Positions 1-39,479 of a stretch of 64,000 bases of DNA are shown piece by piece (positions within the stretch are counted from its first letter, which is position 1; every line of letters starts with the position of its first letter). The notes beneath the pieces are model-generated. The model saw only the letters and a list, made by a program, of their open reading frames with translations, ran no database searches and was not told where the DNA came from. A program made the position numbers and the translations under genes. This DNA is from Obrimoposthia wandeli (taxonomy: Eukaryota): positions 186,001 to 250,000 of the forward strand of contig CDROCS010000787.1 of NCBI GenBank assembly GCA_977020255.1, in the 5' to 3' direction.

Positions 1-3000
1 AAACATATTGCTTGGTTTTAACTTTTCCGACATATAGTTTTGCATCCAAAACATCAAGTCTAGGTTTTAGAACGTTTGTGCTTATCAAAGAAAAGGGCTC
101 TTAATTTCAGTCCATGACTTTGACTCTTGTACCATCCGACGCCAGTAAACTGTTTCCGTGTTGTTAAAAGTGTATGTATGTATCAGTTTGAAAAATCCGG
201 AAATGTATAGATATTTACATACAAGCATGAAATTTCATTTCTTACACACATACACAGTTTGAAAGAACATAGGTGTTTCTCATTAGCGGGAGGACAATAG
301 ATTAGATCAGACACATTCACCTACTCAATGAATCTTTTTTGTTAAATGTTGCTTTAATTTTTAACAACAGACAACTCACTGGCTTGTCTTGTGGTTGAGC
401 TTTAACACACCATTTATTTAATGCCTTTTCTAAATTATCATAATTGGAAATTCGTTTTTTCTTAGGGACTTTTTATTAAAAATGAAATTTATCTCGATGT
501 GACCACCTAGCAATTTTATTTAAATTGTATTTGCAACCAACAGTTCAGGCTAATTGAATTATGTACAAATCTAAGTATAATTCTAAAGTCTAAATTGTAT
601 AAAGATATGAAATAATTATAATTTTGGGATTTCATTTTTCAAGTTTGTTTAATCCAGGTTTCGTTATAATAGGATTATACTGTATTACTTTCAATAAATA
701 CATAATAAATAATTAAATAAATATAAGGAATAAATATCATTTCAATTTGAAAATTGTATTAAACTCTCTTGAATAATTTTTGGAACATAATTGATCATTC
801 AGAATGTTTCAGTTAACAAATTTATAATACAAAATATAACATTAGGTAAAAAGATTATGACTGCAGATTTGTCAAGAAACTCTCAAATGGTAAACAGGGT
901 GAAAAAATATTTGAAATTTATGGCCGGAATCTTTGCATCAACCGAAAGAAACTGTAACGATTTTAAAAATTCTACCTTGGAATCATAGATTTGTTAGACA
1001 TTTGCACTATATTAAATATACGTATTTTCAGTTGTCATAATTTTTTTTATTTTTAATTATAAATGAGTACAAAGAGTTAAATGATTTTAAAAAGTTAAGT
1101 CAAATAAAACAAGTTATGATAACAAAAATAAATTGCGAATTAGATTTGTTTCAGTTTAAGCATAACAATATTGGTTAAAATGAATATAATTTACTGGGAA
1201 AAAACTTCTTTAAATCAGTTATCTAATTATTTTTTCTATTGCTATTCCACAACAAACTAACAATATTTGGCAAATAGCCTTACATGCCAGATGTCCTGAT
1301 TATTATAACAAACAGTTTGATAAATGTCGCCCAGTACCACTTGTCAATCAATATGCCTGGCATTCTGGCATACATTGAAGTAAATTCAATAAATACCCAT
1401 TTTACTGTTCAACATTTTCGGATTTCGCCCTCTTCATAATTTATCTGAAATGGAATTCGTCAAATCACTTTGACTTGTTTAATTTTCTATCATTTTAAGT
1501 TTGTCCAGTACAGTATTTTGTTGAAGCACATGTATAATCATTAGTTACGTGAAATACAATTACTTGCACAATTATTATTTCATAAAGTTTAATTTGGAGA
1601 AATATTATGATTACATTTAGAAATAGTTATCATTTGCGTAGTTATGTACATGTATAATATCTTTAGTTTAATAACTATTGTATATAATATATATTTTCAA
1701 ACATTTTAAATTGCCAAACACTGATTATAGTTATTCTAGCATAATTTAACTGAAGCTGAATCCCAACTAAACTGAATTTTATTTACTGTTACTATTTTTA
1801 AAATATCAATGTTAACTTTAAATACATATTTTCACATAGATAAATTATATTTGTTTATAGTTTTAAATTACTAAGTAAAGTTGATATTTAAAATTTGTTG
1901 ATTAAAAATCATGATGAATTTTAAAACTTATAAAATATATTACTTGAAACATATGGGAAAAGTTTTTTAAAAATTATTAATAAATCGAAATAACATTAAA
2001 ATATTGGTAGTTGATGAATTGTAATGAATTGTAAAGTAACTGGAGACATTTCTCTCGGTAAAATATGGCTTAAATAATAATGTCATTTAATTTTCTGATA
2101 GGAATATTTAAATTTATACAGCAACGAAATACAACAAAAAGGGTTTTTGGGTATTATAAATTAACTAAAATCATTTAGAAACTTTAAAAATATTAAAAGC
2201 ATAATTACAATAAATCATAGGTAAATCGATATTTTAACAAATAAAGAAATTAAGGGTGGTGTTGATATAGCTGGTGAAAGCTAACTCCGTACAAATAAAA
2301 CTTACAACTTGATGCACAAGGTGTAAAATGAAATTATGAGAACATACATAATGGAAAATTTTCCCACATTTTCATCGAATAAAGTTTTTACTTTTTTTTG
2401 TTTTGTTTTTTTTCAATTAATTGATTTACTTACTTTTATGTGATTCAGAGTGCATTAATTTAATATAAATAATTATTTATTTAATAAAGAAAATAGGTCT
2501 ATTCTCAATTGCAACAAATAATATTTATCATATGTATTTAGTTTGAACTGTCATTTATGTTCTATATCAGAAATAAGAGTCTGAAAGTTATTTAAATGTA
2601 TTAGAATTAATTATTTCAAATTATTATATGATTCAAATGAAAAAAATAGCTGTAAAAAAATAGAATTATTTATCATAATAATTTTGACATATACAATGTG
2701 TACTATTTTTGATGTATTAAATTATTTAAAATTTTAAAACCCAATGTAATAGTGTAATTTAAAAAAAAATAAAACGATTTTTATTAATTATTTGATGTAA
2801 AATCTATTTTATTTAAGATCAAATTAATGTATGTTTATCATATTAATTTAATTTTTTAAGTTAAATTAAAATTAAATTAAACAGTTGACAGCTTTCTTAG
2901 AGTAATAACTAATATTATATAATATTTTAGTATTTATTGCTTTAGTTTAACTACTAACTATTAAAAGTAGGTAAATTGTGTATTTAAAACATAGTTAGCT

Positions 3001-3015
3001 TTCAATTATTTTCAG

Positions 3016-3383
3016 ATTCAGACGAATGTACGCCCACGCACAATGTACCTCCACTTCAACTGCACCCACCAAATGCAAACTCGAACACACTTTCAACACC
3101 TTCGCTCGAGCTGCCTCCAGGAGCACCACTGCTTTCTCGACGCCCAACCTTACGAAGACTTCCTCCCGGCTTGTCCAGGCGTCGTTCGAGCAACATTTAT
3201 CCCATGCTGGCACCACCGGCATCATTTTCTACAGGTGGCTCACAACCGTCTGGCCTGTATTCTCTTCCACAACCTCAACCATCTTCTACTCTGGGACCTC
3301 CTATACAACTCATTACTCTTCCACAGCTCGATGGAATACTCCGCTCACAAAAGATTCTTGATATGCGATTGCAAACATTACAA
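3016..3383 (+). CDS. Unidentified gene, internal exon (Pro/Ser-rich low-complexity region leading into a coiled coil)
   Basis: Acceptor ttttcAG at 3014-15 and donor GTaaat at 3384. Open frame (phase 1 to 0): DSDECTPTHNVPPLQLHPP...LSRRRSSNIYPMLAPP...LDGILRSQKILDMRLQTLQ. GC-richer than the flanks. Upstream exons not identified. Confidence 0.8.
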
Positions 3384-4633
3384 GTAAATTGTTTTGTAAA
3401 ATGTGAACCAAATATAAAATTAAACAAAACACTTAAATAAGGCCAAATACATTTTCGAAAAGGTGTAATCTTAAATTTCAGGTATGAAACTTCAAATTTT
3501 TGTATATACAAATAAAAAACTATACAATAATGTATTTTTTTTCAAGTTAAAAGTAGCATATTATAAGTGTTCGTATTCTTATTATGATAGAAACTATTAT
3601 ATTATAATTAAAGATTTGCAAAAGTATAAAAACGAAGCCTGTGGAAAACATGAATCCCCTACTGTTAACTTGAAAAGACAAGCATTAGGAAATCGTCTAA
3701 TCTAAGAGTATATAAAGTAATCGCAAAGAAATCTTTTTTTTAAGGAAGAATTCACTAAAATGAAAATTAGCCTTATTAATATTTTTCTCGTGAAAGAGAA
3801 AGTTGTAAGGCATTGTGTGACTAAATTTCCTTTTAACTCGTTGTAAGCTTTTTCTCACTGGATCCAAGTATACTTACAACGTTCGCCTGTCACTATTAGA
3901 CAGCAGAGATGGTTCAAAAAGTGTTGTCAAAAAGCTTAATTATTTTACATAACAAAAAAGACATAAGAATATCATTGAAAGATTTAAGTTGAATAATTCT
4001 GAATTATAAGTCTTTCATCGGATATTATCAATTCACAGATTTCTAAGCATATGATGTTCTAGTAAATCCAATTAACAATCTATATCCCTCTGGACTGGAA
4101 AATAAGGCTTATATCATATCTTATTCAGATGCTCCTCAGTGGATTATCGTGGCAAGATTCTATCCCTTAATGTTTTTTTAAATACGAATTTTCAAAACAA
4201 AAATAAACTTGGACCAATGCTATTATCTGAATACTGGAAATTCTAAAGTCCTTAGATAAAGAAGAATATAATTAGGAAATGTTGTGTTCGATTAATACTT
4301 GTTCGTAGCTCTTAGATTTGTACACCGTAAACAAATATTTATATTATATTATCTTATACATGCAGGTCATGAAAACTGTTTAAAGTCAGTGTAGATGGTT
4401 TCAAAATATTTAAAATTTAAAGAAAAAAAAACTTATATAATCGTATTGAAATTTATTTTTAAATGTATCTGGAAAATGAAGTCATGGTAAAAGTGAACAA
4501 AGAATCCAGATGAAAATCCATGATTAATTTTAGAATTGAACAATAAATTTGAACCAAATTATGGGCATACAGAAATATTTATGAAGATTTCTTAGATAAA
4601 AGTACAATTTGAAAAAAAGTATTTTATTTTTAG

Positions 4634-8975: not shown

Positions 8976-9175
8976 AATATTAGGCAAAATGCGTATTATA
9001 CCAAAAAATTACAGTGCATTTTATGAAACTTAGCTTGGAAAACTTTAGGAAACTTTATTCATTGAACTTTTGAATGCTATGAATAAAAAATATAAAATAA
9101 TATTTTAGGACCTTTCATCAACTTTTAAATGTTATTTATTTTAAAATATTGTTATAAAGTTTAAATAGTGAAGTG

Positions 9176-9390
9176 GCCTTTTCTATAGGAACAATATAAT
9201 CCAATTCTGAATATCGTTAATAGTAATTTGTGATGTTGCCTTTTAAATAGGAACAATAAAATCCAATTCTGAATATCGTTAATAGTAATTTGTGATGTTG
9301 CCTTTTAAATAGGAACAATAAAATCCAATTCTGAATATCGTTAATAGTAATTTGTGATGTTGCTTTTTAAATAGGAATAATAAAATCCAA
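9176..9390. repeat. Tandem repeat, 62-bp unit, about 3.4 copies
   Basis: TAGGAACAAT recurs at 9186, 9248 and 9310, and as TAGGAATAAT at 9372. The units are nearly identical and have no unique spacers. Confidence 0.95.
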
Positions 9391-10382
9391 GTCTTTTTAT
9401 TCAAATATTTTTAAGTAAATGTTATTTGTGAGATGTCAATATTGCATTTTGCTATTTAAAGCAATAACACATGCAAACACATACAGAGACAGTACTGTAG
9501 TTAAGTGTGTGTGGCAGGATCAGTAACAACGAATGCGCTGCCTCAGTCCATCACAGCACACACATGCACGCAGAAATCAAGTCCGGAAACTCCCTTCCCC
9601 AAAAGTACACTTAATTTGCCAAAAGTAGAATGAAGAGTGCACATCTATCGATTGGCTTTGTAGGGCACACAAATTCCGACGTCACATGTTCTGGTGTGGA
9701 AAAATTGTGTGTATGTCTTTAACTGCAGACAGTCTTTAATCAGTCTTCTGATGATTGTGTCAGCCTCAGAGTTACAGACACTGTTGCCATCGATGTCAAA
9801 CATTGAGTGTTAGCAGATAAAGAGAGAGAGGGAAGACCAGGATGAAGACAGCCGATGTGATAGAGTGGGTAGCCGGGATCAGCAGCGCTGGGAGAGTCGC
9901 CGTTGTTGTTGCCACCGCTCCCATATTGTTTGTTGTCAGCCAGAGAGAAAATTGCATCAAACCGCAATTACATCCGCTGTCTTTTCAGGTAGAGCGTGAT
10001 TGACTGGGGAACGCAACTGGTCCCGCATACACACAACATAAAGAGGGATGTATAGGTGAATTGAGGATGATGTTGATGATGATTCTGGCCGATGATGGGG
10101 AAGGAAGGTGGAATAGGACCAAATCTGTTGGGAGGTCCGGAGAGCTGTTTGGGCTGATCTCGGTCTACTGGTTCTGTTTGTGTGTTCGAGGACTGGTGCA
10201 GTGTGGAGGGTGAATTAGAGGCAGTATGGTGTGGGGCCCACGAAAAGTTGGTACACAGTAGAGAGAGAGGGAGATTGCGCTGTTGGTCAGGTTGCGGTGC
10301 TGTCATCAAAGTCTGCGGTATCCGCCGCTAGAGAGGAACTGGGCGGAAAATTCTGCCATAAATCTATTTTTATCTATATGCC

Positions 10383-10432
10383 GCCTTCCTGACGAGCCCG
10401 GCAGGGCGAAACGGGACCACCCCGTCGGAGGC
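10383..10432 (+). ncRNA. Type I hammerhead ribozyme
   Basis: Stem I GCCTTC(10383-88)/GGAGGC(10427-32); core CTGACGA (10389-95); stem II GCCC-GGCA-GGGC (GNRA loop); GAAA (10408-11); stem III ACGGG-ACCAC-CCCGT; cleavage triplet GTC, with the cut predicted after 10426. All conserved core nucleotides are present. Confidence 0.93.
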
Positions 10433-13400
10433 TGAATTTGAAAAACCTCCCTAATTGTGGGCACTTTAGATAACTATAAAATGTCAATTTAAATTGACTT
10501 TAAATTAATTAATTTTTATTAATTACCCAACAATATTATTCCATTTGATCTGTTCCAATGAATGAAGCAAATGTTGATAAAATATTAAATTACTATTTCA
10601 GCTTTTAAACAATTATTTGACTTCAAATCAAACTAAAAATCTAAATTTCGGCTAATTACATTCTTTAACAAATGTTATCTTCATAAATGTATTATCTGGC
10701 CAATTTAGTCTAGAAAGCTTATACAGGTTGCTTTCAGTTATATTTCTAATATTGTTGAAGCTAGAGTACTTTCACTGCTTAAAGAATAATCTAGGTCGTG
10801 AGTTCTTAAGACTAGTATGTAAGACGTATCCAGATTATTCTTAGCTCTGAATGTTAATTAATTTATTAATATATGTATTGTATTGTGAGACCTTATGGGA
10901 GTCCTTTGTAGATCTGAGCCCAGAATTCGCTTGATCAAATGGTGCAAATCCTGCTAATTCAGGTAAAAGTGTTGGTGGCAAAATTGTCTTCTTCTTCTTT
11001 TGAGAATATTTGTCACTATTTTGTATTGAAGAAAATAATAGTTTTCTTTTATATGTTTCCAAGACAGTAATTGGTCTGCTTGAATTTTTTTCTTCTTATG
11101 TTTATGCGACTGTGTCGCTTAGTGTTGCTGCTTAGTAGTTGTGCTACTGCTTTCTTTTGATAAATATACGGTGTTTAGTGGTGCCTCAGGTGACTATATT
11201 ACTAATTGATTCAGAGTTCACATGAGGTTAATTAACTCGTCCATTTTCCAACACGGAGTTAATTAATTATTTTTTTCTATAACTTTCCAGTTTCAATTTT
11301 AATTTAATTTTCAACGTTCCTAAAATGTCTTTGCAGGAACTGTAAGTATAGCAAAATTATTTTAGTAATTTTAATAAAATTGTTCATTTCTGGACCTCAA
11401 CAGTATGAACAATTTATCAATCACAAAAACTTAAATAAAACATTTTATTATCGTTTAAATTAGCATAAAACGTAATACAATTATTTAAATACAGAGTTAA
11501 AACCTAAAACAAATACAACTACATAGTTCTCAGATACGTAATTTGTGATGTCGAAATATCTGCATACTCCTAAACTATTTTTTGACATTGTTATGGGTCA
11601 TTTGTTGATTATTGAAAAATGCTAGAACCGTGGCGGGTCCGGGAATTTAACAGAAAGGTGTAAATGACGTTCTGCAAAGCTGCCTCAACTTTCTTCTAAA
11701 TTCATATCTTAAGTGACTCGACTCAAATAGTCAGCACATGTCACCTTAGGTTAATTAACTCAATTTCAGAGTTAACTAAGCTCTCATTCTTTGGATATTT
11801 TTCTGGTAATTTTAATTTCTTAATAAATATTTCCCCTTATTTGTACTTACACAGGATTATAATTATAGCTAATTTTATTTTATTTTACCACTTCCAATTG
11901 TTCTACTCTGAAATTCAACAATACTATAATTATTGTCAAATATATTGTATATTTCCTTTAATGAAATGTATTTTTAATGATAAAAATGTCAAGAAGATTT
12001 GAAACATGCTAATGGTAAAAAAACGATCTAAATCACATAGAAGGGTTAAAGCCAATTTAAGAAGAGCGTTTGAAACGACAATCCGAAAAATACTTTGAAT
12101 ATAAATTTACCTTAAAAATAATTTCCTGAAAAGATTTCCGTAAGACTAAACTTTATCACGTACATTTATTTGAAATCATCAAATTGATTAGCAATATACT
12201 TTTCCTGACCTTTAACTATTTTTGAAATGCTTTTTCAGTGTATTTCAAGTTAAGGTTTTTAATTGTTTAGGTTCTGTTTTAATACCTTTAATAACTTGAC
12301 TTTTTTACACCATATTAGATTAAAGAGCCTCGTCCTGTTAAAACGTAAAAGCACCAGCTATTATATTGTTATTCATCATTCAATCCATGTGTTAGCAATA
12401 TAAGGGTAAGCAACAAAATACGTCAGAATTCATCTAACTTTGACATTCACTTTAATTGATAAACATTTTACTGACGTTGTTGGCTTTTGATCCATCACAG
12501 TTTTTTCGTTTCCAAACTTTCATCATCCCTATGTGTTACTGATCTTGCTGATCTAACATGATAATTTGTACTGAATAGGATAAAACAAATTTCAAAATGT
12601 AAAATGAAAGGATCACAAAATTTACAATTATAGCTTACAGAAGATAAACAACTAAAGGAGGAATATGAAATAGTAATAGCGAAATAAGTTTAAATAAAAA
12701 ATATTTGAAAGACAGTGTCAAAATTACAAAGACATTTAAATACATTTAAGATTCAGAGAAAAGAGGATTGCAGTAGTATGTGATTTATCAGAGATCTTCA
12801 AGTAAAAGATAATGAAAGAGATCAACTAGTGTCATTGATTTTGATTATGGAAAGTATAATGTAATAACTTTCCGTCAAAAACTAAATTTAAGAGGGGGTA
12901 CTCGTATGAAGTCGCATATGCACTGAAACAATTATATATTTAAATTATGTACAAATACCGTTTTTTGAATCGAGGATTCACAATACTTATAAAATTCTGA
13001 GCAATAACATTAATTAATACCAAACTCAACATTCATTTACAATTGCATTAATAATTGAAAATAATACTTTTTCATTTATATTTAATTGTATTATAAATAT
13101 GCTAGCTCACAACTTGAAGTGCCAAACCTATTTTATATTTCTATAACGAAATTATTTTAAAATTATTAAAAAACTTCTGTAAAGTTTTATCACCCCACCA
13201 GCATTGAAATAAAAGTTAAAATGTAGATATTTAACCATAATTTATTTGTTATATTAAGATGAAATTGCAAATAACTTATTTTAAACTATTTTCTAAATTA
13301 TTATTTGTATAAATAACAACACATATGATTAATTTTAATAATTTAAAAACAGAATAATTATTTAAAATATTTAATAAAAATATAACTAATTCTGAATCTG

Positions 13401-17914: not shown

Positions 17915-18213
17915 TGTTTGAGGGACCATTAAATTGGTAAAACATAGAAATACACAACATAGATTCTTTATTTATCATTACATTAACTTTCAAATTAAAA
18001 ACTTTCCATAACAACTTCTTCAAATGACCAAGGTCACTTTTTAACTTTTTTAAACAATTCCAAACTTTAACATATTAAAAACTTTTATATATACCTTCAT
18101 CGCTACTTTCATTACCCACCCTACCGTCATCCTAATTATTACTATTTAATTTATTTAATTAATAATATTTAGTATTTAATTCTTTTCTATTAATAATAAT
18201 TAATTCTTCAACA
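17915..18213 (-). repeat. 3' LTR of the nested BEL/Pao element
   Basis: TGTTTGAGG...TTCTTCAACA, a direct repeat of 25495-25796 with roughly 20 differences by eye. A polypurine tract (minus strand TGGGGGAAAA, 18214-18223) abuts it. Confidence 0.95.
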
Positions 18214-21200
18214 TTTTCCCCCATTTGATCAGACTAGATCAATCTACGACTTAACTATATTCTATTTAACTTACTATTATTTCTCATACTCTTTACTCAT
18301 CATTATCACCCAGTCACATGCTTACTTTCATTATTCAGCATTGACATAAGGATAACAATGAGCAAATTATAAAACAGCTCAAAGGACCCAATCTAATTTA
18401 CACAAGCTATGCAGCGCTCTAACTATTAACTTATTTTCCACCCTAATCTTAGCTACTCTCACCTTGCCATCCTCTCCGGTCTCTAATTTTTCCATTCTAC
18501 CTAATTTCCATTTACCTCTCTCCTCTTGCTTCTCTATTATTCACAAGATGTCATCGATCAGTAACGGTGTGCCACTTTTGCCACATGGGTACTATCTCCT
18601 CCATCCATCGCTTCTATAGCATACTGGTTAACTTTTGGACAAATTTCTATCTGTGCTTCGACCTTATTTCATCACTCCCAAACTTCTTCTCAGCATACGC
18701 TTGATTTATTAAAAAAATGGTTGGGTGTAAGAGCCTCAATTTCCTTCGCAACCATGCTCTTAACTCCAATGGATCTAGAATTTACAAGGCTTTCAGCTTC
18801 GATGAATACTGATTGTAATTCTTCGTCAGTCACTTCGGCTCCTCTTAGTATCCGGTATATAGCCATTTTGGCACATTTTATCAGGATCTCAAAGATCCCT
18901 CCAAAATGTGGTACATGTGGTTGGTTGAAGACCCAACGTATCTCCTCCTTTACTAACTCCCTTTGAATCCGATAACCGTCCCGTATTAATTCGCTCACTT
19001 CATTAAACGCCCCCACAAAATTTGTGCTATAATCCGATATTATCATCCGTGGTCTCTCTCTTCTTCCTATAAATCTTTTTAATGCCCTAATAAACCCATC
19101 GACATCCAAACCATAAGCCATCTCTAAATGAATGGCCTGCGTTTGCAGGCATGTAAAAAGGTAAGGGTATATCTTAGTCCTCACTCTTCCTCGTCTTTGT
19201 TTTGTGATGAGTGGCCCTGTAAAGTCCACTCCGACGTTTGCAAAGGCCCTTAACGGTTGTTTGAATCTGAATCCCTGCAAGGGGGCCATCTCTTCGACCA
19301 TCACTGCGGCTTTACTTTTAAAGTATTTTTAAATCGTATTATCCAAGCTAAGACTCTCTTCAACCTCGTCAAGTCGGAATAAGTCTCTATCTTGAAACAG
19401 TTTACTTCCTGTATGAACATTGTTACCTCCTTGTACCGTCTCTTTTTCTCTTTATCTGACTGTATTTCTTCTAAGTCTAAATTTACTAGCCAATTTTATT
19501 TCTGTTTCTTTAGGTACTCCGGTCCTTCCCACAAAATTGTCTCATCAATCAATAGCTGTACATCGACTCCCCGCGATAGTATATCTGCTGGATTTAGCTA
19601 AGTGAACACATACCTTTAGAGCTTTATATCTGTATCCTCTTGGATCATTCCCACTCGGTTGGCTACAAAGGGGTTGTAGTCTCTTTCGGCTGGCGTATCC
19701 ACCATAATACGTTCTAACTGTCCCACCAAAATGTTGTTTTTACCTCCATTAAATTTAAGCCTCCCATATCGTTTGTGCTAACTTCACTCCAATCACTGCA
19801 GCCATCAGCTCTAATCTGGGTACACTTTTTATCCTCACTGGGGCAACTCTACTCTTAGCTGCCATCAATCGCATCGTCACTCTGCCTGCGTCTTCATTAC
19901 GCATGTATGCTACTGCGCCATACGCGGTAGTCGAGACATCCATGAATACGTGCATTTCTTGCTTTTTCTCATTCGTTATCACCCACCTCGGAATCTTTCT
20001 CTGTCAATCGCTTACAATCCGCTATCCATTGTACTATTCTCCTAGTTAATTCTTGACTTACTTTGTGATCCCAATCCGACCCTGTAAGCCAGACTTCCTG
20101 CATAATAATTTTGGCTCTTATGACTATCGGGCTAACAAAACCTAATGGATCAAACACTTTTGATAAAAGCTTAAGAAAGATCGTTTGGTTATGTCGTCGA
20201 CTTCGTAAAATTTTGTTAATATGAAAATATTGTTAAATTTAACATCCCAGTGTACGCCTAATGTTTTTACTGTTAAGTTACCCTCTTTGTCATGTAATTG
20301 TAATGCATTTGCTCTTTCTGAAAGTTGTATTTTTTCATTAACCTCCGGGCTATTGCTAATCCACTTCCTTGCAATCATCCCTGCATTCCCCCATATTTTC
20401 ACCATCTGATCTTTTAGCTTATCTGCTTCGGTTACTGAAGACACTGAATCTAGACTATCGTTCTTGTAGGTTGATTGCAAAATTGTCTCACTGGCTCTTG
20501 GGCTCTTCACTTTAAATGTTCAGCCTCTACTCTGGTTACCAGTTGAGCCAAGAACGGTGAAGCATTTATTCCAAAGACTACTCTCTGAAATTTATACATT
20601 TCCCTCTGGTTCTTTCTATTTTTCCTTAAGAACATTAGCCATGGCCGGTCTTCCTAACATACCTTGATCTGTAAGTACATCTCTGAAATATCACACACTA
20701 ACGCTATTACATTCCTCGGAATCGCAGAAGAATTGCTATAAGATCTCCTTGCAGCTTGAGACCACAATTGATTGCCTCATTTAGACTCATATTATTACTT
20801 TTCCCGCTGCGCCAAAGACTAATCTTACTTGTGTTGTACTTTTTTTCCTTTTTATCACTGGGAAATAAGGTAGTAACCAATTTGTTTCTTTCTCTTCATC
20901 TAGCGTTAACTTTTTTATGTATCCGTTAGTCATATAATTTTTTATTACTGTTGAATAGTCGTCTTTTAATAATCGATCCTTATCCAACTTTCTGATGAGA
21001 CTATTTAACCTTTTTTCGATCATGGAGCTATTCATTCTCAATTCGGCTTTTTTCTCATTCCATAGCAACTTAACTTCATAGCGGTTGTTCTCATGTACCA
21101 CTTCTGCTCTTGATAAGTGTAGCAATTGAGACTCCTCGTAATTTATCTTCCTTTTTCCATCAGGAACAGATTCAACTTCCCAGAATCTTCTTAAATCAAT

Positions 21201-24200
21201 ACCCACTTCTTCCTTACTGAATAGTGTATAGCATATATTGGTCGATTGATTGACCGCGTTTGTCTTGACACATATCCACCCTAGTGTTGTTAATCTCGCA
21301 ATAGGTGCATCACGTGGACCTACTACTTCTTTGATACATCGGTGTAAATCCAGGTGGTCAGCTTCAATTAGTATATCAACCTTCTTTTGGGACTCTTAAT
21401 TCGTAAATTCAATGCCTGCTAAATCTAGCCAGTAAAATGATTCTTCAGACCAGTTTATCACCTCTAAGCTGTCAGCAATTTCCTCCAGCGTCAACATCTT
21501 TACTACTTGTTTAGTTTTCCCATATCCTCTGCTAATTTCGGCTTCTATCTCTTTGCAGTCTAACTTACGCACCTCACCACCAATAACTCCCATTGGCAGT
21601 TCTATTTTTGTATCTCGTGCTCCCAAAATGTAAGCTAGATCCTTACTTATATATGATAGGGTACCAGCGTCATCTAATAGTGCGTTCGCGCATGTTTCAA
21701 TTCATTTTCTCCTTATTATCACTGGCACTGTCCTTAACGCTACGAATGCGCGTGCTTTCTGTTGTTTATCCTTTATTACCATTGTTTTACCTACTACCCT
21801 TTCCCCACTTTATCGTGCAGAAGCCAATGATGCTTTTCGTGACATTCATATGTCCGACATAACTTGTTAAATCTCCACTTCTCCACCGTGTGATTACTGC
21901 GTAAGCAATTCTTGCATACTTTCTCTCTCTCGACCCACTTCTGCCTCGCTGCCACTGTCAACTGTCTAACTTGCTCACATTGATCAGTATATTGGTTGGC
22001 TTTACATTTTGCACATTTGACCTTTCTTTCGAATTTGTGGATTGGTTATTCGTAAGTAATGTGTGAGTGTAATGATGTGTGTCATTGTTTTATCTCCCGT
22101 GTTTTTCAACGTCGCTGGTTCGTCTTCTTTGATTCTCACGACTTCCATTAACCTTGTTGGCTCTCCTTAGATTCTCACTTTCTTGCTGGGTCCATATCTT
22201 TAACATACATACATTTTATTTCTCTCCGTTTTGTTGGAACCACTTAGTCCAATCCATCACTCCTAACATTGGCAACTTTCTCAAAAGCTTGTTGAACAGA
22301 AACCCATTTCCAAGATCACCTTTGTTGTTTTCTTCTCTTGCTCTGATTACTATCTTGTTTATTAATTGTACAAATGCATCCAGATCCTTGGTTTTCTCTC
22401 CATCTTATCACTCTAAACTTTTCAACTTCGTCCATTAAACCTCTATAATTTCTTTCCCTTCCTCCGTATCTTTATTCTAGCAATCTTAAAGCTTCGTCGT
22501 AACTTGTATCTGTGAACCCAAGGTTTTGAATTAATCTGTAGGGTTCACACCTCACATATTCCATCAGCTGTAGCACTTTTTCTTGCTTTGGCGCATTGGT
22601 CAGATCAACGACAGTACCAAATATTACCCTACAACTTTCATAATCTTTATAATCCCCAAAGAAATATGGAATACTAATCTTTTTTAGCCCCTTCCACACA
22701 TTTTGGCCAGACTTATTTTCTCTGGGTTCGTCTCTCATATTCCTTGGTTCTTTTGTGGTCTTACTTTCAAATTCCTTTTCTGCTTTTGCAATATCACTCT
22801 TTATTTCCTTTATCTTGAGTTCGTATTTGTTTTCCACCGTCTGCTCCAACTCTTTGTTATTCTGGTAACTGAATATTCGTATACCTCTTTCTCTTGTCTG
22901 AATCCTCTTTTGTATTCCGTGCTTCCGTCTATTTATCCCCAGCCAATATTATATACAAACTTGTAACCCTCTCCGCGCTCTCATTGTTTACCTCCCACAT
23001 TCTCCCTTTCAACATCATCATCACGACAATATTGCTTTCTTCGCCAATGCTCTCCCCCATCTCAACTTTCCTTCCCTGGCGTTGTAACCAGCAATTCTCC
23101 TCCTCCAACCCATATCGCTTCTGATTCTCCTCCATTGCATCCTTTCCTGTGCCATTTCGTTTCAAGGCACTACCTTTATATGTGCCCCTATGCATAAAAG
23201 GTATTGACCCACATCACTACTTCCTCTAGCAGGCCCATTATCTCCGATAATGTAACCACCACTGAATGCGCACTTCTTCTCTTGGACTTCACCGCTTGAC
23301 CTCCATGTTAATTCTTCCACTCTTTCATCTTCATAAACGCATCTGACTTCTATTGGTTTCTCCTCTGCATCCGAACATTGACATCACTGGCTATCGTATC
23401 TGTCATTCTTTCAACAGTTATCTCTTCTTGACATTGCCACTCTTCTTGAAAGGTTCTAGCCACCTTTTCCTGAGGCCATGGCCACGATCCTTGCGTTTGG
23501 ATGCACGCTGACACCGTCCTCAACCGACATTGCGAAGCATCCCTCCATCAGACTTCGTCTATAGACCTCCGCCAATGCCGGCTGAGGTAATTTCTCGGAT
23601 CGTGCCTGAAATCCTTTGAAATTCTCCACATATGATTCGTCAAAGAATGAGTCAAACGTCTCCTTGAATCGTTTATAATCGCTTATCGAATTAAAACTTT
23701 CCCTGCGATTTAACTTTACTTTTACTATGTATTTCATCATTTTGGTATTTGTTATTTGGTAGTCGTATAATATGACTATTAAAAAATTAACTACTACCAA
23801 CAAAACAAAACTAAATACTATATTTCTATACATGAAATGTCGAAAAATTGAACCTTTTACATTGAACCCTTTTACTTTTAATTTAGAAAATAACGGTGTG
23901 AGTCCCGGTAAAAAAATTGTAAAAAGGTCCAACCTTCAGCAGCGACTTGTCCACTCATAATATTTGGCGCATGATAAAGGGCTCCAGCTGTGGCACCTTC
24001 TCCGATTGTCCGATCGCCCGTCGTATCCATCTTGAAATCTTCAGGTCCTTGTCCATTTTGTCCTGACCATTTTCAAGTGACGCTCCCTGCTCCACGAGTT
24101 TGGTGAGATTCTCTATCTCCAACTTGATCTTTTCCCGAGCCAACTTCTATGCTTTCTCGGTTTTCTTCTTCATTGACGCTATTGTCTTCTGATCCTCTTG

Positions 24201-24204
24201 TGAC

Positions 24205-25400
24205 AAACAAAATCCAAATTCCCGTCTTCCAGCAATAATAACCGCATCGTGTTCACATCGCACGACTAATTTGATATCGTTACCGAGGTTAAACTTTCGG
24301 TATCGATAACCCACTGAACCCAGGTTTAATTTGTCCTTGTCTTCATCCAAGAATGGATTCGGATTATCGAAGGCAAATATTTTATGTTGAAGAACCTGTT
24401 GGGTGAAGGTATGGTTTATAAATGTAGCTTCCAGTGACAAACTGCAGGAAGAATTAATATTATTCGAATCTTCAGCTGGAAATTGTTATTGCCCGGTCTT
24501 TTGTCTAAAATAAGATTATATCCTACTTTCTTGACGAAAATATCCCAAGAATAAACAGAACGTGTACAACACATAAGGGCCGATATGAAAGCATCGGTGG
24601 CAAAAACATTTCCAGCCTTTTCATTAGCCAATTTATGAATTATAGGATCATCTCCAGTGGCAACATTATGAATTATGTGATTCATAAGTTTCAATTTCTG
24701 TATATTATGGGTAATAATTATGTTGTGATTTTTATCATAATATCTTAACTCACCACAAGTATAAAGATCTTCTGGTTCTTCTGAGAGGATCATTGATAGC
24801 TTGTTGAATCAACTAAATGCAATCTCCTCAACTACTTTCCATGTAAATTTACCTTGAACCGAAGCCTCCATATGAATTCGAGCTTGTCTACGATAATAAT
24901 TACCCCATCCTGTAGCATTATTTAAGCAACCGTGTTGCTTATTAATCCTTCTCATGCCTTGTTGCCTTTATCTATTTATGAACTTATATTTCTTAGTCAA
25001 TCCTAAGCGATATTGTTGCTCGAGTTGTTGCTGTTTTTTCTGAGCGACCTTTTCTCTGCGGGTTCTAGTGGCAGCAAATTTGTTCTTCTTTAAAAAGCTT
25101 TATTTTTGATATTTAACAGTATTGACCATATTGAAAGTACTTTCATCATATTCATGTACATATGCATATTGATTTCCTTGAAAATTCATATTATTAATTC
25201 TATCCATCCTCTTCCGTAAGTCAGGACTATAATTCCTTGTCCAATCTGCAAATTTACCTACTTTTATATCTTTATTAAATGGCTGATAAGGAAGATCCGC
25301 AAACCTCTCTGGGACTGTATAAGGATCCCATCCATCAGGGCCATCATCAAATGTTAATAACAAAAATCCAGTTGAGAATTTAGTGTCTGCCCTGGCAACA
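24205..25400 (-). pseudogene. EIF3D: Intronless, 3'-truncated eIF3 subunit D copy inside the LTR element
   Basis: Translates to DGWDPYTVPERFADLPYQPFNKDIKVGKFADWT, NQYAYVHEYDESTF, GNVFATDAFISALMCCTRSVYSWDI, SLEATFINH.F.QQ, NPNPF, SVGYRYRKFNLGNDIKLVVRCEHD, all hallmark eIF3d motifs. There are four in-frame stops between 24800 and 25100 and a ~30-nt frameshifting deletion near 24470. Confidence 0.93.
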
Positions 25401-25480
25401 TCTGACTGAGCTTCATTATCCAGACGAAATATATAGAACTGATTGGTGTTTCCTTATGCCTTCCGTTCTTCTTTCTTCTT

Positions 25481-25494
25481 ACGCTCTGCTACAA
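25481..25494 (-). promoter_or_regulatory. Primer-binding site, initiator tRNA-Met type
   Basis: The minus strand reads TTGTAGCAGAGCGT directly after the 5' LTR, one mismatch from TGGTAGCAGAG, the complement of the animal tRNAi-Met 3' end. Confidence 0.8.
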
Positions 25495-25796
25495 TGTTTG
25501 AGGAACCATTAAATGGGTAAAACATAGAAATACATAACATAGATTCTTTTATAATCATTACATTAATTTTCAAATTCAAAACTTTCCATAACAACTTCTT
25601 CAAATGACCAAGGTCACTTTTTAACTCTTTTAAACAATTCCAAACTTTAACATATTTAAAACATTTATATAAACCTTTATCGCTACTTTCATTACCCACC
25701 CCTCACCGTCATCCTAATTATTACTATTTAATTTATTTTATTAATAATATAGTAGTATTTAATTCTATTCTATTAATAATAATTAATTCTTCAACA
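25495..25796 (-). repeat. 5' LTR of the nested BEL/Pao element
   Basis: TGTTTGAGG...TTCTTCAACA, matching 17915-18213. It is followed on the minus strand by the PBS. Confidence 0.95.
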
Positions 25797-29403: not shown

Positions 29404-29707
29404 ATCAATGAAGGTGACCGAGTCAAAGCCTGTAGTACGATGTCGCTGAATTTACCAGCTAGGAGCAAAAGCTTCACAAACGAATCTAAATCTACGTTTT
29501 TGAAAACAGAAAATGTTTCTTTAAGTAGCCCTGAAGAGAACATAAAGATCCCATTGAGAGAAATAAAAGAAGATAAATATTTTCTTGAAAGTGAAATATC
29601 CAACACATTTCTAATTATGGTTTGTGGAACCAAAGGAGTAGGAAAAACGTCATTGTGTGAACAATTTATGTCTTCTGATTCAGCCTATCTCAATGACGAT
29701 GATAATG
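29404..29707 (+). CDS. RGK-family small GTPase, exon 2 (P-loop)
   Basis: atttAG acceptor at 29402-03. INEGDRVKACSTMSLNLPARSKSF...IMVCGTKGVGKTSLCEQFMSSD contains G1 GxxxxGKT. Donor GTaaag at 29708. Confidence 0.85.
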
Positions 29708-30400
29708 GTAAAGTTTTTTTCATTTAGAGTATCCCAAATATTATATATGATTGATGCACATACTACGCTATGCGTTAATGAGTAAATCGAAAGGAAATTT
29801 CCATATATTTTAATAAATATATATTATCTATACTACCTTGATTTAAATCACTCTAACTTGTTTCATTTGTTTTTCAGTGGTTTACTCATCTTCAAAATAC
29901 TCAAACGAAGTGTAATAATATTGATTTATTTGTATGTTACTTATAAGTTATAATGAAAGCATTTAATTATTTGATCATTAGTAAAAATCATTATCCATTT
30001 CTCAAAGGAATGAATAAATAGTTCGTTTAAACGAATTACTGTATTCAACAGATTAATATTTCCATTTTAAAAAATGATTTTTTTCATACCAACGATAACG
30101 TATCTTCAACCCTTTTACTCTATCTTTATTGCCTCATTAAAAAAATCTTATAATTTGGTCTAGCGACTCCAAAGAAGAATAAAATATTTAATAAATAATA
30201 GCAATCAATCAACATAATTTAAATTTATCTAATGTAAATGTTGCACTTAGTTTTTAAAATTTCAGTTAATTTGATCATTTCGGCTCTTTTGGACAATTGA
30301 TAATTAAAATGCTGATTTCGGCCAATTTCCGTTTATGATCAAAAATCAGAAGCAGAATTATTATACACCATTGTAAAAATTATTCATTTACTATATTTAG

Positions 30401-32839: not shown

Positions 32840-35172
32840 AGAGAATAATGTACATACGCTAAACTCTTGTTTTTCTGGATCCAACAACTCTTGTCATCCA
32901 TTGAGCAGGGGGCAATTTTCAAAGATTATATTGTGTATAATTAATGGTTCACTGTGCCAATCTTTTTCTGGGGTATACTATGGGTTATTCTATTTTCGTA
33001 GACATCAAAGTAAGTCTGATGAACAACCATGTAATCTTTTAAATTAACTACTTTTGCCTTTTATATTTCATCATCGCCTTCAAACTTGAGTGAATAACAT
33101 TTAGGTTATAAGAAAATCCATTCGTTATAGGCCTGTCCTTCAGATTCATCCTTAAATAGTCCGATCTTATTGTTTAAAACATTAGAGTAAACAATAACTT
33201 TTTCACTATAATTAGAAGTATATACTAATCAATCTGCAATCATATTTTGGTAACAACTGATTTCTTAAATAAACGTTTTTATATTCCAAAAACAATGAGT
33301 CCGTATCTCCAGCATCTTAATTTATTTTACAATTGAGTTTCCAAACCATCTTCATCGATAACGTTTCTTCGAAACGTTTGAAAGACATCGGCTAACAAAT
33401 ACACATCTGTTTTCAAGTATACAAGCACAAGGAAGTACCAAAATGAAAGGCAAAATACCCTTTCCATCGATAAGTTTAGAAGGTAATGCGGTTCTTGTCA
33501 ACGGGATACTCGGTAATGTATTAAGTAATTTTTCTAGAAACGATTGTAAAAATTGCATAGAGTCTTTAAAACGAATTGAAATTTTGTCAAAATGTACAAT
33601 CGTGGCTTTCAGTTGATTGTGGTATTTAATTTATTTTTCAATTTGGAAATATATGTAAAATATGCTTTAGTATATGATGTAAATCATAACGTCGTAGATT
33701 ATGAAATACGACTGGTTATACTGGTTTTTAAAGTTTTCTAGAAAGATTACAAGTATTACATATTGCACCTAAATATTTCCCGGTATTATGATCATGATCT
33801 CTAACATAATAATCACTAGTTTCGCGACAAAGATAACATTGGCTAGCATGTTGAAATTCAAAGTTTTCCCCTAAAAGTCAACGATAATATTTTATTTTGT
33901 ATTACTTTTACATACCAGGGTAAAACTAAATAATTTGCAAATTTTCCAATGAAGATAGAAAACTGTATACGCAATCAGGTCCGATATTATAATGATATGA
34001 CTTTTCATTTTCATCAGTACTCATAAATAGTAAACCAGATGCTATTAGCATATGTTTTTGATAATAGTCATCATCATATACTAAAGTTGCTTCAAAGTCT
34101 ACGTAAACTACATATTTAGGAGACACTGTTTTTGACAAATCTGTGAATTTAACATATTTTTCCTTTGGCATGGTATACATTGTTGTACCTTCATTATTTA
34201 AATCACATAAATCATAATGCTTATCTAATGCCATATCTGATCTAAAACCACGTAGACACTTTTCGCACCATTTTCGAGAAATTCTTCTGGAGTTATATCT
34301 AATATTTAATATGCGATCATGATTGGTTATGCCAATGTAATGAAAACATTCATTATGCTCCAACAGTTCCAAATTAACAATCTGTCCAATATTTTTCTGC
34401 GATCTATATGTAATGTCTATGTAGGGTGTTTTATAACATCAACATATATTTCTTCAATGACGACATCATTGTATAAAAATACATTTATCCTTATATTCGG
34501 GTTCTTTGTCTCAAACTTTGGTATATTTGAAATATTCATTGGGGTATCTATTTTGTCAAACACAAAATCTTTCAAAAAAGATGAATACTTTCCTACACAA
34601 GTTTTATCACTAGTAATTGCACCATGTTTCAAAACAGCCAGAATTGCATAAATAAAAAATAGATTGTCATTGTTTTGAACATTTACAACAGCTTGACTTT
34701 TTGAAAACGATTTTAGTGTTCGAATGTATGAATGTCCTGATAAACCAGATATTTCACTATATTTCGTCATGACAAATGCATATTCTAAAACCTTTATCAA
34801 TTTTCATCCACTTATTTTTTCTGAATATTCTTCAACTTTTTAAACCATAGTTTCTTCGATTCCAGGAATTTTTTCATAACTAAATATTACCGCCTTATGA
34901 GATGCATACCATTCTTTAGTTTTACATTCCTCCTTTTTAAATTCCATCTGTATAATGTATTAAATTTTTGCATTGCCCATATTATTCATTATTTTTACTA
35001 CTTTCACTAGAATATTATCCGAAACTTTCAAATCAATAAGGTTTAGACGAGTGACTTTCATTGATATCGTCGAGTAACTTCCTCCTATCAATGTTTTTAA
35101 GTTAATCGAAGTTTTTTTTATAGTATTTCGAAGTAGTAAATGTCGAATTATGGATTGTAAAGAACCAATCAA
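32840..35172 (-). mobile_element. Polinton/Maverick-like DNA polymerase B gene, fragmented
   Basis: Successive broken frames: HSYIRTL...AVVNVQNNDN...FDKIDTPMNISNIPKFE.KN.NIRINVF; WCEKCLRGF...L.KHYDLC...YVVYVDFE; VRDHDHNTGKYLGAICNTCN (endonuclease VII-like); VFHNL..YD; DVCLLADVFETFR; KIGLFKDE...PKCYS; DDKSCWI. Confidence 0.85.
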
Positions 35173-38198: not shown

Positions 38199-39479
38199 AA
38201 TTTTGGTGGTTATCAGTTTTGAAAAGAAATAATATATATTATATATTTTTTCACTTTTATGAATTAATATTTAAACTGTAAAAAATATTTATTGTATATC
38301 CAACAGAGATAGAGATGGTGGCACAAAACATGTAATTCGATCATTGAAAATATAATTATGACTGGTTGAACGCTATTTCAAAGTTTAAGTCTAAAATTTG
38401 AACTGAAATGCAAAGTCGATATATGTTCTAGTTTCATAGAAATAGTGACTCATTTGCATTGTCTCATAATGCAAACTATATTAAGTGTTACCGATTGTAT
38501 ATATGGTTTTTGTATGTAGTAATTCGAAGTATAGCACATGGGAACGCAACCTTCGTGTTCATCAAATGCAGTATCCTACAGCCTATCAATATAAATTAAA
38601 AATCAAAATTTTAGTTACACTTTTCAAACATAATGTATGTTTAAACCTATAATTCCCATGAGTATTAATTTTTGTTGTAAAAGACAAAAGGTAGGTAAAA
38701 ATAGTTAATAATTTGTTTTAAATTTCCATTTGAAGCAACAGCCTGTTTTTGATATAACTAAGTGTCATTAATATTAATTTTAAAATATTTATCTGTTAAT
38801 AGCCATGTAAAAGCCATAAAATTTAAAAACCTATTACGAATAACTGGGTTATTGGTTCGTTATATTAAATTTTATGTTATTCACAGTTTAGTACTTTTTT
38901 CATCTGAAATCGATTATTTATTTCATTTTTGGATCATTTTTCTATATATTCTTTAACTCTAGCTCATTTTAACTATCATCAACTGGATGCATATTTTAAA
39001 CTTCAAATCACAAAATAAGTTACTTCAATTTATGAATATGAATTCATTGTTAGTGTATTTAGAAAAATTAAAAGCTACCTCCGAGATTACTAAGAATTAC
39101 AAAAGAACTTTAGAAGAAGAAAAAATGTTTTTATCATAAATGAAAATAATTTTTTTGTAATTTTTTGTTGTTGTTGTGACACCGTAATTTCTACAACAAA
39201 GAAATACAATGCTAATACAATGTTTACTATGAATATAGTTTTCTTATCTTATCTAGTCACTCAATAAAACTTAAAGTACATGATTTAGAATGTGAAATCA
39301 GAAAGACTGAACACATTAAAAATATAAAATATACATTGACTTGATTCAGTGCTATGCTTACTTCAAAAATTCAATTATTAAGGCAAGTTAAAATGATTTA
39401 TATTTGCTTGGAGAAAAGGTTTAGTGATTCGGAACTTAAGCCAAAAAGTTCATCAGCAATCAATCAACATGCATGGTCC

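What the first reader, a model, noticed from the sequence alone, without database searches (positions are those of the whole stretch)
10383..10432. Intact type I hammerhead self-cleaving ribozyme
Every catalytic-core nucleotide is present (CUGACGA, GAAA, GUC). All three helices pair: stem I is 6 bp with one G-U, stem II is 4 G-C pairs with a GGCA GNRA loop, and stem III is 5 bp. This is a full monomer-competent fold rather than the minimal dimer-dependent type. It lies between two + strand genes in sense orientation, so any read-through or upstream RGK transcript crossing it would be cut after 10426. Hammerheads are established in animal retrozymes, satellites and Penelope-like elements; this instance and its carrier could be undescribed.
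Basis: partly seen in the sequence, partly recalled or inferred. Interest (0 to 1): 0.9.

Follow-up and report, generated by a model that had tools for sequence, protein, structure and literature searches.

The report
Hammerhead ribozyme inside a solo-LTR-like repeat
A complete self-cutting hammerhead RNA motif is really there, but it is cargo of a very abundant mobile-element repeat, sitting near one end of a 1.4-kb LTR-like insertion, and there is no sign that it serves the neighbouring genes; LTR-type carriers are reported in the papers I read for plants but not for animals.

Summary
The motif at 10383-10432 (+) is confirmed. All core bases are present, helices are 6/4/5 bp, and the cut site is after C10426. 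Rfam Hammerhead_1 aligns end to end at 25.3 bits, below its 34-bit cut-off. A strict descriptor hits once in the window and never in 3000 simulated windows.

It is not a lone device between genes. Contigs of four runs of one sample pile up about 1000-fold over the flanks from 10380 to about 10485-10498, so the ribozyme plus a 55-65 nt tail is a repeat module with thousands of copies. Many copies have a different helix III loop.

Here the module lies 100 nt from the right end of a 1383-bp insertion (9150-10532). The insertion has TGTT...AACA ends and a 4-bp ATAT duplication, and it splits an older AT-rich repeat. That makes it solo-LTR-like.

Loop 2 (GGCA) is not GNRA, and no RGK gene was found upstream.

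I could not settle which strand the LTR reads on, so retrozyme-like processing and cutting of antisense RNA both remain open. Cleavage is untested.

The scan noted hammerhead-bearing LTR-like elements before on other DNA of this genome. In the papers I read, animal type I hammerheads sit in non-LTR retrozymes and Penelope-like elements, so I class this as a new variant of a known kind.

The parts
10383..10432 (+). Type I hammerhead ribozyme motif, 50 nt. Helix I is 10383-10388 with 10427-10432. Core CUGACGA is 10389-10395. Helix II is 10396-10399 with 10404-10407, loop GGCA 10400-10403. GAAA is 10408-10411. Helix III is 10411-10415 with 10421-10425, loop ACCAC 10416-10420.
   Evidence: Sequence read. 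RF00163 full-length alignment at 25.3 bits. The hammerhead fold at -21.4 kcal/mol lies close to the MFE of -22.5. Strict descriptor: 1 real hit, 0 in 3000 simulated windows.
10426..10427 (+). Predicted self-cleavage site: after C17 (10426), before G10427.
   Evidence: Position follows from the standard hammerhead numbering applied to the alignment. Not tested experimentally.
10380..10498 (+). Very high-copy repeat module: the ribozyme plus a 55-65 nt AT-rich tail that ends in the 16-nt palindrome 10483-10498. The right limit is uncertain (about 10485-10498) because 10500-10527 was masked by the read-laying tool.
   Evidence: Summed contig depth is 45,000-104,000 here, against 7-32 in the outer flanks and 83-2470 in the rest of the element. 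Loose ends show other copies diverging before 10380.
9150..10532 (.). Solo-LTR-like insertion of 1383 bp, 41.5% GC, with 5'-TGTT...AACA-3' termini. Its reading orientation is unresolved.
   Evidence: Contigs of paralogous copies of the flanking repeat join about 9140 to about 10543 with only 14-25 other letters between. It is the only TG...CA plus 4-bp duplication candidate within 40 nt inside and 26-27 nt outside the final ends; simulated frequency of such a TGTT...AACA pair with a 4-bp duplication is about 0.002. No terminal inverted repeat beyond 4 nt.
9146..9149 (.). Left copy of the 4-bp target-site duplication ATAT.
10533..10536 (.). Right copy of the 4-bp target-site duplication ATAT.
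9168..9394 (.). Tandem array of a 62-bp unit, 3.7 copies at 95% identity, inside the left part of the element.
   Evidence: Tandem Repeats Finder and the repeat finder. Depth 570-1440 shows it is repeated elsewhere too.
9470..10340 (.). GC-richer interior (48% GC) of the element, low to moderate copy number, with no convincing coding capacity.
   Evidence: Composition. Depth 83-2470, rising towards the ribozyme. The 113-aa antisense ORF has no Pfam hit and no homologue.
10446..10450 (+). CCUCC that can pair with GGAGG (10427-10431), the 3' strand of helix I. This forms a competitor hairpin to helix I, or a hairpin at the 5' end of the 3' cleavage product.
   Evidence: Folds of 10427-10460 and 10355-10500. 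The share of the hammerhead fold in the ensemble drops from 0.036 to 0.007-0.01 once the downstream tail is included.
9067..9145 (.). Left half of an older AT-rich repeat that the element interrupts. The right half runs from 10537 to about 10800.
   Evidence: Depth 364 and 130-1080 in these bins. Contigs elsewhere hold the two halves joined (tables 2, 5, 5c, 8).

Best explanation
**What it is.** The sequence is a structurally complete, cis-acting type I hammerhead ribozyme. It is the conserved 5' part of a repeat module of about 105-120 nt that is present in thousands of copies in this animal genome.

**Where this copy sits.** The module lies 100 nt from the right end of a 1383-bp element (9150-10532). 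That element has TGTT...AACA termini and a 4-bp ATAT target-site duplication. These are the marks of integrase-type insertion, so I read it as a solo LTR or a solo-LTR-like non-autonomous element. It inserted into an older AT-rich repeat.

**How it would work.** Any RNA read through it on the + strand can fold the three-way junction and cut itself after C10426. The upstream piece would end in a 2',3'-cyclic phosphate and the downstream piece would begin with a 5'-OH at G10427. Its stable 5-bp helix III should let it work as a monomer.

**What is shown and what is inferred.** Shown: the motif, its repeat-family membership, and the insertion with its termini and duplication. Inferred: catalytic activity, the LTR nature of the carrier, and the role in the element's life cycle.

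**Two roles remain open, depending on the strand of the LTR.**
- If the ribozyme is in sense, it would process element RNA at both LTRs into a unit-length RNA that can be circularised, as in plant retrozymes.
- If it is antisense in U3, as earlier untested-here follow-ups report for Gypsy elements of this genome, it would cut antisense or read-in transcripts about 100 nt inside the LTR.

Any effect on host transcripts would be incidental.
For: - **Motif.** All core bases are present and the helices are 6, 4 and 5 bp. The alignment to RF00163 is end to end, 25.3 bits, E = 0.001 on 801 nt and 4227 families.
- **Chance.** The descriptor finds 1 site in the window and 0 in 3000 simulated windows.
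- **Fold.** The hammerhead fold lies 1-3 kcal/mol from the MFE in contexts from 50 to 383 nt.
- **Family.** Depth is 45,000-104,000 at 10380-10473, against 7-32 in the outer flanks. At least 58-68 distinct contigs per run carry a single variant at 10464. Loose ends show copies whose helix III loop is CUAACAA instead of ACCAC while the stems are kept. No substitution within 10383-10432 is among the listed variants of at least 5% share, whereas the tail shows several indels.
- **Carrier.** Joints of paralogous contigs skip about 9141-10542. There is a single TG...CA plus 4-bp duplication solution, with TGTT...AACA ends and simulated frequency about 0.002, and no terminal inverted repeat.
- **Analogy.** Plant retrozymes have hammerheads in LTRs, 4-bp duplications and many solo LTRs (PMC4918200).
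Against: - The Rfam score is below the gathering score (25.3 against 34), and the match drops out of both whole-window scans.
- No other copy could be fetched as sequence, so there is no covariation test. The variant table was truncated (42 rows not shown).
- All four runs come from one sample. Their kind is unknown, and contig depth is only a rough proxy for copy number.
- The left end of the element (9134-9200) has only flank-level depth, so a conserved LTR scaffold is not shown.
- Depth rises gradually towards the ribozyme. Such a gradient is also what 5'-truncated non-LTR or Penelope-like copies would give.
- ATAT is an easy duplication to find by chance in AT-rich DNA.
- A downstream CCUCC competes with helix I.
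- No loop 1 to loop 2 tertiary contact can be recognised. No RNA data could be laid.
Confidence: 0.65

Rival explanations
1. The ribozyme module is the 3' end of a Penelope-like element, or of a non-LTR retrozyme or SINE-like derivative, copied by target-primed reverse transcription. The 1.4-kb piece is then a 5'-truncated copy or pseudo-LTR, and the TG...CA ends and ATAT duplication are coincidence.
For: [quoted passage not shown] Most are found as single dispersed motifs from truncated copies (PMC4209133; PMC8557442; PMC7229834).
- Depth rises stepwise towards the ribozyme, from 83 to 2470 and then to about 100,000, as with 5'-truncated copies and with non-autonomous elements that share a 3' module.
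- The left terminus has no excess depth.
Against: - The insertion has exactly one TG...CA solution with a 4-bp duplication and TGTT...AACA ends, simulated frequency about 0.002.
- No RT or GIY-YIG remnant and no ORF with a Pfam hit lies in the 1.2 kb upstream.
- No tandem arrangement of the unit is seen here.
- Metazoan Penelope-like hammerheads are described as minimal, with a 0-2 bp helix III that works as a dimer (PMC4209133). This one has a 5-bp helix III.
Confidence: 0.2
2. The motif is a host regulatory ribozyme placed between two + strand genes. It ends or destabilises read-through or 3'-UTR transcripts of an upstream gene.
For: Any + strand transcript crossing the site would be cut if the ribozyme is active. 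Hammerheads in mammalian 3' UTRs and introns are known (cited in PMC7229834).
Against: - The motif is one of thousands of copies of a repeat module and lies inside a transposon-type insertion.
- No upstream RGK gene was found; the RGK-like ORF is 19 kb downstream.
- There is no evidence of transcription here, because no RNA run was served.
Confidence: 0.04
3. It is a chance look-alike or a dead relic: a GC-rich stretch that happens to satisfy the hammerhead descriptor, with no selection for cleavage.
For: - The Rfam score is sub-threshold.
- The z-score of the 50-nt fold is only -1.44.
- The MFE structure differs slightly from the hammerhead fold.
- The scan read many windows, so a few chance matches at 25 bits are expected overall.
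Against: - There are 0 hits in 3000 simulated windows.
- The motif is retained in a family with thousands of copies, without listed core variants and with loop-only variation in helix III.
- By-eye type I hammerheads with a long helix III in loci L001, L003 and L004 are also missed by Rfam at E of 0.1 or lower. The low score therefore reflects the model, not the motif.
Confidence: 0.05

Closest known systems
Plant LTR retrozymes (Cervera, Urbina and de la Pena 2016, PMC4918200)
   Same: The hammerhead is embedded in an LTR-type repeat with a 4-bp target-site duplication. Many copies are solo LTRs with an isolated ribozyme, and the interior is non-coding. The ribozyme is a conserved island in otherwise heterogeneous sequence.
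   Different: The plant elements carry type III hammerheads, have LTRs of 300-400 bp, are over 55% GC, and have a defined PBS (tRNA-Met) and PPT. Here the ribozyme is type I and the repeat is 1383 bp in an animal genome of about 29% GC. No PBS, PPT or paired LTRs can be seen, because only a solo copy is present. The sense orientation is not established.
Metazoan non-LTR retrozymes (Cervera and de la Pena 2020, PMC7229834; review PMC7761336)
   Same: Type I hammerhead with the 6-bp helix I and 4-bp helix II geometry. Invertebrate versions are reported to have a stable helix III and to cleave as monomers. Copy number is very high, and the ribozyme lies in AT-rich non-coding repeats.
   Different: Those are 150-450 bp tandem repeats said to lack LTRs, PBS and PPT, with larger duplications. 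Here there is a single dispersed copy inside a 1.4-kb TG...CA element with a 4-bp duplication, and no tandem unit.
Hammerheads of Penelope-like elements and Terminons (PMC4209133, PMC8557442)
   Same: Type I topology, location in a terminal repeat near one end of a retroelement, and many dispersed single motifs.
   Different: Metazoan Penelope-like hammerheads are minimal, with helix III absent or 1-2 bp, helix II 6-8 bp, and action as dimers. This one has a 4-bp helix II and a 5-bp helix III. No RT-GIY-YIG ORF is nearby, and the termini look integrase-type.
Bacterial and phage type I hammerheads with a long helix III
   Same: Core and helix II are identical (CUGACGA, GCCC/GGGC, GAAAC), and helix III is long and G-C rich. 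The 24 specified bases of the search pattern are shared.
   Different: Those lie in contigs of about 60% GC, with an ATG-started ORF following in L003 and L004. There is no sequence relation outside the ribozyme. This is a resemblance of the motif only, not of the carrier.

Membership tests
Hammerhead ribozyme, type I (Rfam RF00163, clan CL00010) | Conserved core: C3 U4 G5 A6 N7 G8 A9, G12 A13 A14, the A15.1-U16.1 pair, and H17 at the cut site | tested here: met
   CUGACGA at 10389-10395, GAAA at 10408-10411, A10411-U10425, C10426
Hammerhead ribozyme, type I (Rfam RF00163, clan CL00010) | Three helices around the core, with the open end in helix I | tested here: met
   Helices of 6, 4 and 5 bp, with loops closing II and III and helix I open
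Hammerhead ribozyme, type I (Rfam RF00163, clan CL00010) | Score at or above the family's curated gathering score (34 bits) | tested here: not met
   25.3 bits, and absent from the gathering scan. The shortfall goes with 9 rather than 2 unmodelled letters in helix III and 4 rather than 6 in loop 2. Three by-eye hammerheads with a long helix III in L001, L003 and L004 are also missed.
Hammerhead ribozyme, type I (Rfam RF00163, clan CL00010) | Loop 1 to loop 2 tertiary contact that gives fast cleavage at physiological Mg2+ | tested here: inconclusive
   Loop 2 is GGCA. No internal loop is recognisable within the 6-bp helix I, and distal pairings are only weak predictions.
Hammerhead ribozyme, type I (Rfam RF00163, clan CL00010) | Site-specific self-cleavage | not testable with these tools
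   Needs an in vitro or in vivo assay.
Hammerhead ribozyme, type I (Rfam RF00163, clan CL00010) | Covariation that supports the helices across homologues | tested here: inconclusive
   Only a loop III replacement with kept stems could be read from loose ends. No copies could be fetched as sequence.
LTR (solo LTR) of an LTR retrotransposon or LTR retrozyme | 5'-TG...CA-3' termini with a short inverted repeat | tested here: met
   TGTT at 9150 and AACA ending at 10532
LTR (solo LTR) of an LTR retrotransposon or LTR retrozyme | Target-site duplication of 4-6 bp and an empty site in paralogues or orthologues | tested here: met
   ATAT on both sides, simulated frequency about 0.002 together with the termini. 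Paralogous contigs join the flanks with 14-25 letters between. Those are diverged paralogues, not a true empty allele.
LTR (solo LTR) of an LTR retrotransposon or LTR retrozyme | Full-length relatives with two such repeats flanking a PBS, an internal region and a PPT | not testable with these tools
Earlier scan notes claim such elements, but I did not check them.
LTR (solo LTR) of an LTR retrotransposon or LTR retrozyme | U3-R-U5 organisation (promoter and polyadenylation signal) that fixes the orientation | tested here: inconclusive
   TATAAA at 10475 (+) is only 57 nt from the end. AATAAA lies on the minus strand at 9401. TATA-like boxes occur in the 62-bp array. None is decisive.
Metazoan non-LTR retrozyme | Tandem repeats of 150-450 bp, each with a type I hammerhead | tested here: not met
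   There is a single hammerhead in 64 kb and no tandem unit around it.
Penelope-like element pseudo-LTR | An adjacent RT plus GIY-YIG ORF, and a minimal, dimer-type hammerhead | tested here: not met
   No such ORF or Pfam hit lies within the element. Helix III is 5 bp, not minimal.

The most novel reading that the evidence does not exclude
This animal genome holds LTR-type mobile elements whose terminal repeat carries a conserved, monomer-competent type I hammerhead module, amplified to thousands of copies. There are two versions of this reading.

- They could be the first animal counterpart of plant LTR retrozymes, with unit-length RNA cut out at both LTRs, circularised, and copied by Gypsy reverse transcriptase.
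- If the ribozyme is antisense in U3, they could be a retroelement-encoded device that destroys antisense or read-in transcripts and so limits double-stranded RNA and small-RNA silencing of the element.
Probability: 0.35. Interest if true: 0.75.

Novelty: new variant of a known kind. Interest (0 to 1): 0.5.

Why it matters
In the papers I read, hammerheads of animal genomes are tied to non-LTR retrozymes and Penelope-like elements, and LTR-borne hammerheads are described only for plants, with type III motifs. A type I hammerhead module kept at thousands of copies and carried by integrase-type (TG...CA, 4-bp duplication) elements in an animal would join the two worlds. It would offer a tractable system to ask what a ribozyme does for an LTR element: circular-RNA intermediates or defence against antisense RNA. 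For this single locus the practical message is smaller. It is transposon cargo, and nothing found here makes it a host gene signal.

Tried and rejected
- **Rfam gathering and whole-window E-value scans.** The hammerhead was not reported; it appears only in a local 801-nt scan.
- **Other copies in the window.** None were found by blastn, by pattern or by descriptor.
- **Other copies from public collections.** The exact core pattern found 4 metagenome contigs, all about 60% GC with unrelated carriers, and no viral contig.
- **Translated ORFs as a back door.** I searched the protein collection with ORFs across the ribozyme (52 aa) and in the element's interior (113 aa), hoping to reach other genomic copies. 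Neither found any candidate. An exact look-up of a window ORF found no record.
- **RNA evidence.** The run search returned only runs of unknown kind from the same sample, and the single read-laying run was already spent.
- **Organism.** Run and organism names are coded, and an Atlas look-up of an Arf-GAP/PH-like exon gave no usable taxon.
- **First boundary guess.** I first placed the boundary at TG 9450 ... CA 10486 with an ATTT duplication. I rejected it after the joints put the insertion limits near 9140 and 10543.
- **Terminal inverted repeats (DNA transposon, Ginger-like).** None were found beyond TGTT/AACA.
- **Coding capacity of the interior.** No Pfam hit.
- **Orientation from TATA and poly(A) motifs.** Not decisive.
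- **Literature.** Two searches found no paper on hammerheads in animal LTR elements.

Full report
**1. Observation**

The 50 nt at 10383-10432 on the + strand read as follows:
- helix I 5' strand GCCUUC
- core CUGACGA
- helix II GCCC/GGGC, closed by GGCA
- GAAA
- helix III ACGGG/CCCGU, closed by ACCAC
- C17 at 10426
- helix I 3' strand GGAGGC

Every invariant hammerhead position is present. Helix I has 6 bp with one G-U pair, helix II has 4 G-C pairs, and helix III has 5 bp counting A15.1-U16.1.

A local Rfam scan aligns the stretch to Hammerhead_1 (RF00163) over all 45 model positions. The score is 25.3 bits, with E = 0.001 for 801 nt, both strands and 4227 families. That is under the curated 34 bits, and the match is absent from both whole-window scans. 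The shortfall goes with the unmodelled letters: 9 instead of 2 in helix III and 4 instead of 6 in loop 2.

Three metagenome sequences that share the same core and fold by eye as type I hammerheads with a long helix III are L001, L003 and L004. They also go unreported at E of 0.1 or lower. The low score therefore says more about the model than about the motif.

A strict descriptor required helices of 6, 4 and 4+1 bp, the full core and H17. It finds this site and no other in the window, and nothing in 3000 first-order Markov windows of 64 kb. A relaxed version gives 2 hits in 3000.

The canonical fold costs -21.4 kcal/mol against an MFE of -22.5. It stays within 1-3 kcal/mol of the optimum in contexts up to 383 nt.

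- GGCA is not a GNRA loop.
- The 'upstream RGK transcript' found no support. The only RGK-like P-loop ORF is at 29440-29727, downstream.

**2. It is a repeat module**

I laid Logan contigs of four runs of one sample on 9000-11000 at 80% likeness or more. The summed depth in run X1 was:

| Region | Depth |
|---|---|
| outer flanks | 7-32 |
| most of 9536-10339 | 83-2470 |
| bins covering 10340-10473 | 45,000-104,000 |
| 10474-10540 | 14,000 |

The other three runs show the same shape. Loose ends show that other copies become unlike just before 10380. This is 3 nt before helix I, after a partly conserved ...CAUUUUUACC.

The right limit is about 10485-10498. It is blurred by the tool's masking of 10500-10527 and by a 16-nt palindrome at 10483-10498.

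Many distinct contigs cover the module; for example, 58-68 per run carry C>T at 10464. The copy number is therefore in the thousands, although contig depth is a rough measure.

Two sets of loose ends (10415 behind, 10421 before) read GAAACGGG-CUAACAA-CCCGUC. A large subfamily thus has a different helix III loop with the same stems. Among the listed variants of at least 5% share, none lies in 10383-10432, while the tail has indels at 10434, 10441, 10449 and 10474. The list was truncated, so this is suggestive and not a formal conservation test.

**3. The carrier**

Several contigs join about 9090-9140 directly to about 10538-10611 with 14-25 other letters between (tables 5 and 5c). An older AT-rich repeat exists elsewhere without the roughly 1.4 kb that lies between here.

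I scanned 65-nt stretches spanning both limits (40 nt inside and 26-27 nt outside the final ends) for TG...CA ends with a 4-6 bp direct duplication. There is one solution. The element spans 9150-10532 (1383 bp), starts TGTT, ends AACA, and is flanked by ATAT at 9146-9149 and 10533-10536.

In simulated AT-rich flanks, any TG...CA with a 4-bp duplication turns up in 8% of trials. With TGTT...AACA it turns up in 0.24%. The predicted 15-letter empty-site filler resembles the 14 letters seen in a paralogue.

There is no terminal inverted repeat beyond those 4 nt, no tandem hammerhead unit, and no ORF with a Pfam hit.

The element is a mosaic:
- a 62-bp x 3.7 tandem array at 9168-9394
- a 48% GC interior of low to moderate copy number
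- the very high-copy ribozyme module
- an AT-rich end

This is what a solo LTR looks like, or a solo-LTR-like non-autonomous element. The cut site lies 106 nt from the right terminus.

First-stage notes on other pieces of this genome describe TG...CA solo-LTR-like elements with hammerheads, conserved ends, swappable interiors and tandem-array cassettes. I used one of them as the lead to look for the termini and tested that here. The rest I could not test.

**4. Mechanism**

What the sequence allows: any + strand RNA through the site can fold the junction and cleave after C10426. With a 5-bp helix III no second copy is needed.

A CCUCC at 10446-10450 can sequester the 3' strand of helix I. This would favour cleavage during transcription, before the competitor is made, and would give the 3' product a 5' hairpin. 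That is inference.

The role for the element depends on the LTR's orientation, which motif scans could not fix.
- **Sense.** The arrangement is that of plant retrozymes. Cuts in both LTRs give a unit RNA without R, which is ligated to a circle and reverse-transcribed from a PBS (PMC4918200).
- **Antisense.** Three earlier follow-ups in this genome report hammerheads on the strand opposite Gypsy genes (untested here). With this LTR on the minus strand, the motif would lie 100-150 nt inside the 5' end of U3. It would cut antisense or read-in RNA.

I lean slightly to the antisense arrangement by analogy only.

**5. Rivals**

- **Penelope-like or non-LTR retrozyme 3' end.** This is the main rival. 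It fits the published carriers and the depth gradient. It does not fit the termini, the 4-bp duplication, the absence of RT-GIY-YIG remnants, or the non-minimal helix III.
- **Host regulatory ribozyme.** Unlikely, given the repeat-family membership and the lack of an upstream gene.
- **Chance look-alike.** Unlikely, given the simulation and the retention across the family.

**6. Comparison and novelty**

The motif is an ordinary member of the hammerhead class. Stable-helix-III type I hammerheads that cleave as monomers are reported for invertebrates (PMC7761336).

What differs from the published picture is the carrier. The papers read here state that metazoan hammerhead repeats lack LTR, PBS and PPT and have larger duplications (PMC7229834, PMC7761336). 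LTR-borne hammerheads with 4-bp duplications are described for plants, with type III motifs (PMC4918200). Two literature searches found no animal LTR case.

I therefore rate the finding a new variant of a known kind, with three caveats:
- Only a solo copy could be studied.
- Activity is untested.
- The scan had already noted the same kind of element elsewhere in this genome.

Noticed in passing
window 17915-25701: LTR retrotransposon with 207-bp LTRs (17915-18121 and 25495-25701, 94% identical) and integrase- and RT-like ORFs on the minus strand. Its LTRs carry no hammerhead match and show no similarity to the 9150-10532 element.
   Followed up: partly
window 9067-9145 and 10537-10800: An older AT-rich repeat (depth about 130-1080) is split by the hammerhead-bearing insertion. 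Contigs elsewhere hold it uninterrupted.
   Followed up: partly
L001:682-709(-), L003:766-793(+), L004:410-437(+): Metagenome contigs of about 60% GC hold by-eye type I hammerheads with the same core and helix II and a long helix III; in L003 and L004 an ATG-started ORF follows shortly after. Rfam does not report them at E of 0.1 or lower. L002 scores as Hammerhead_3 at 44 bits, below its 48.5 cut-off.
   Followed up: partly
window 54893-55008 (-): Sub-threshold match to U6atac snRNA over the whole model (23.7 bits, gathering 33, E = 0.096).
   Followed up: no
window 39276-39334 (+): Sub-threshold match to the GAIT element (33.5 bits, gathering 37, E = 0.013). Probably chance.
   Followed up: no
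window 2988-3437: A stretch of about 450 nt is open in all three + frames and is GC-richer than its surroundings. It could be another compositional island or repeat. It was not examined.
   Followed up: no
window 33926-34800 (-): Two adjacent ORFs of 148 and 127 aa have a zinc-finger-like start but no Pfam hit. They may be a remnant of a mobile-element gene.
   Followed up: no
window 10483-10498: A perfect 16-nt palindrome (GTCAATTT/AAATTGAC) lies where most copies of the hammerhead module stop resembling this one.
   Followed up: no
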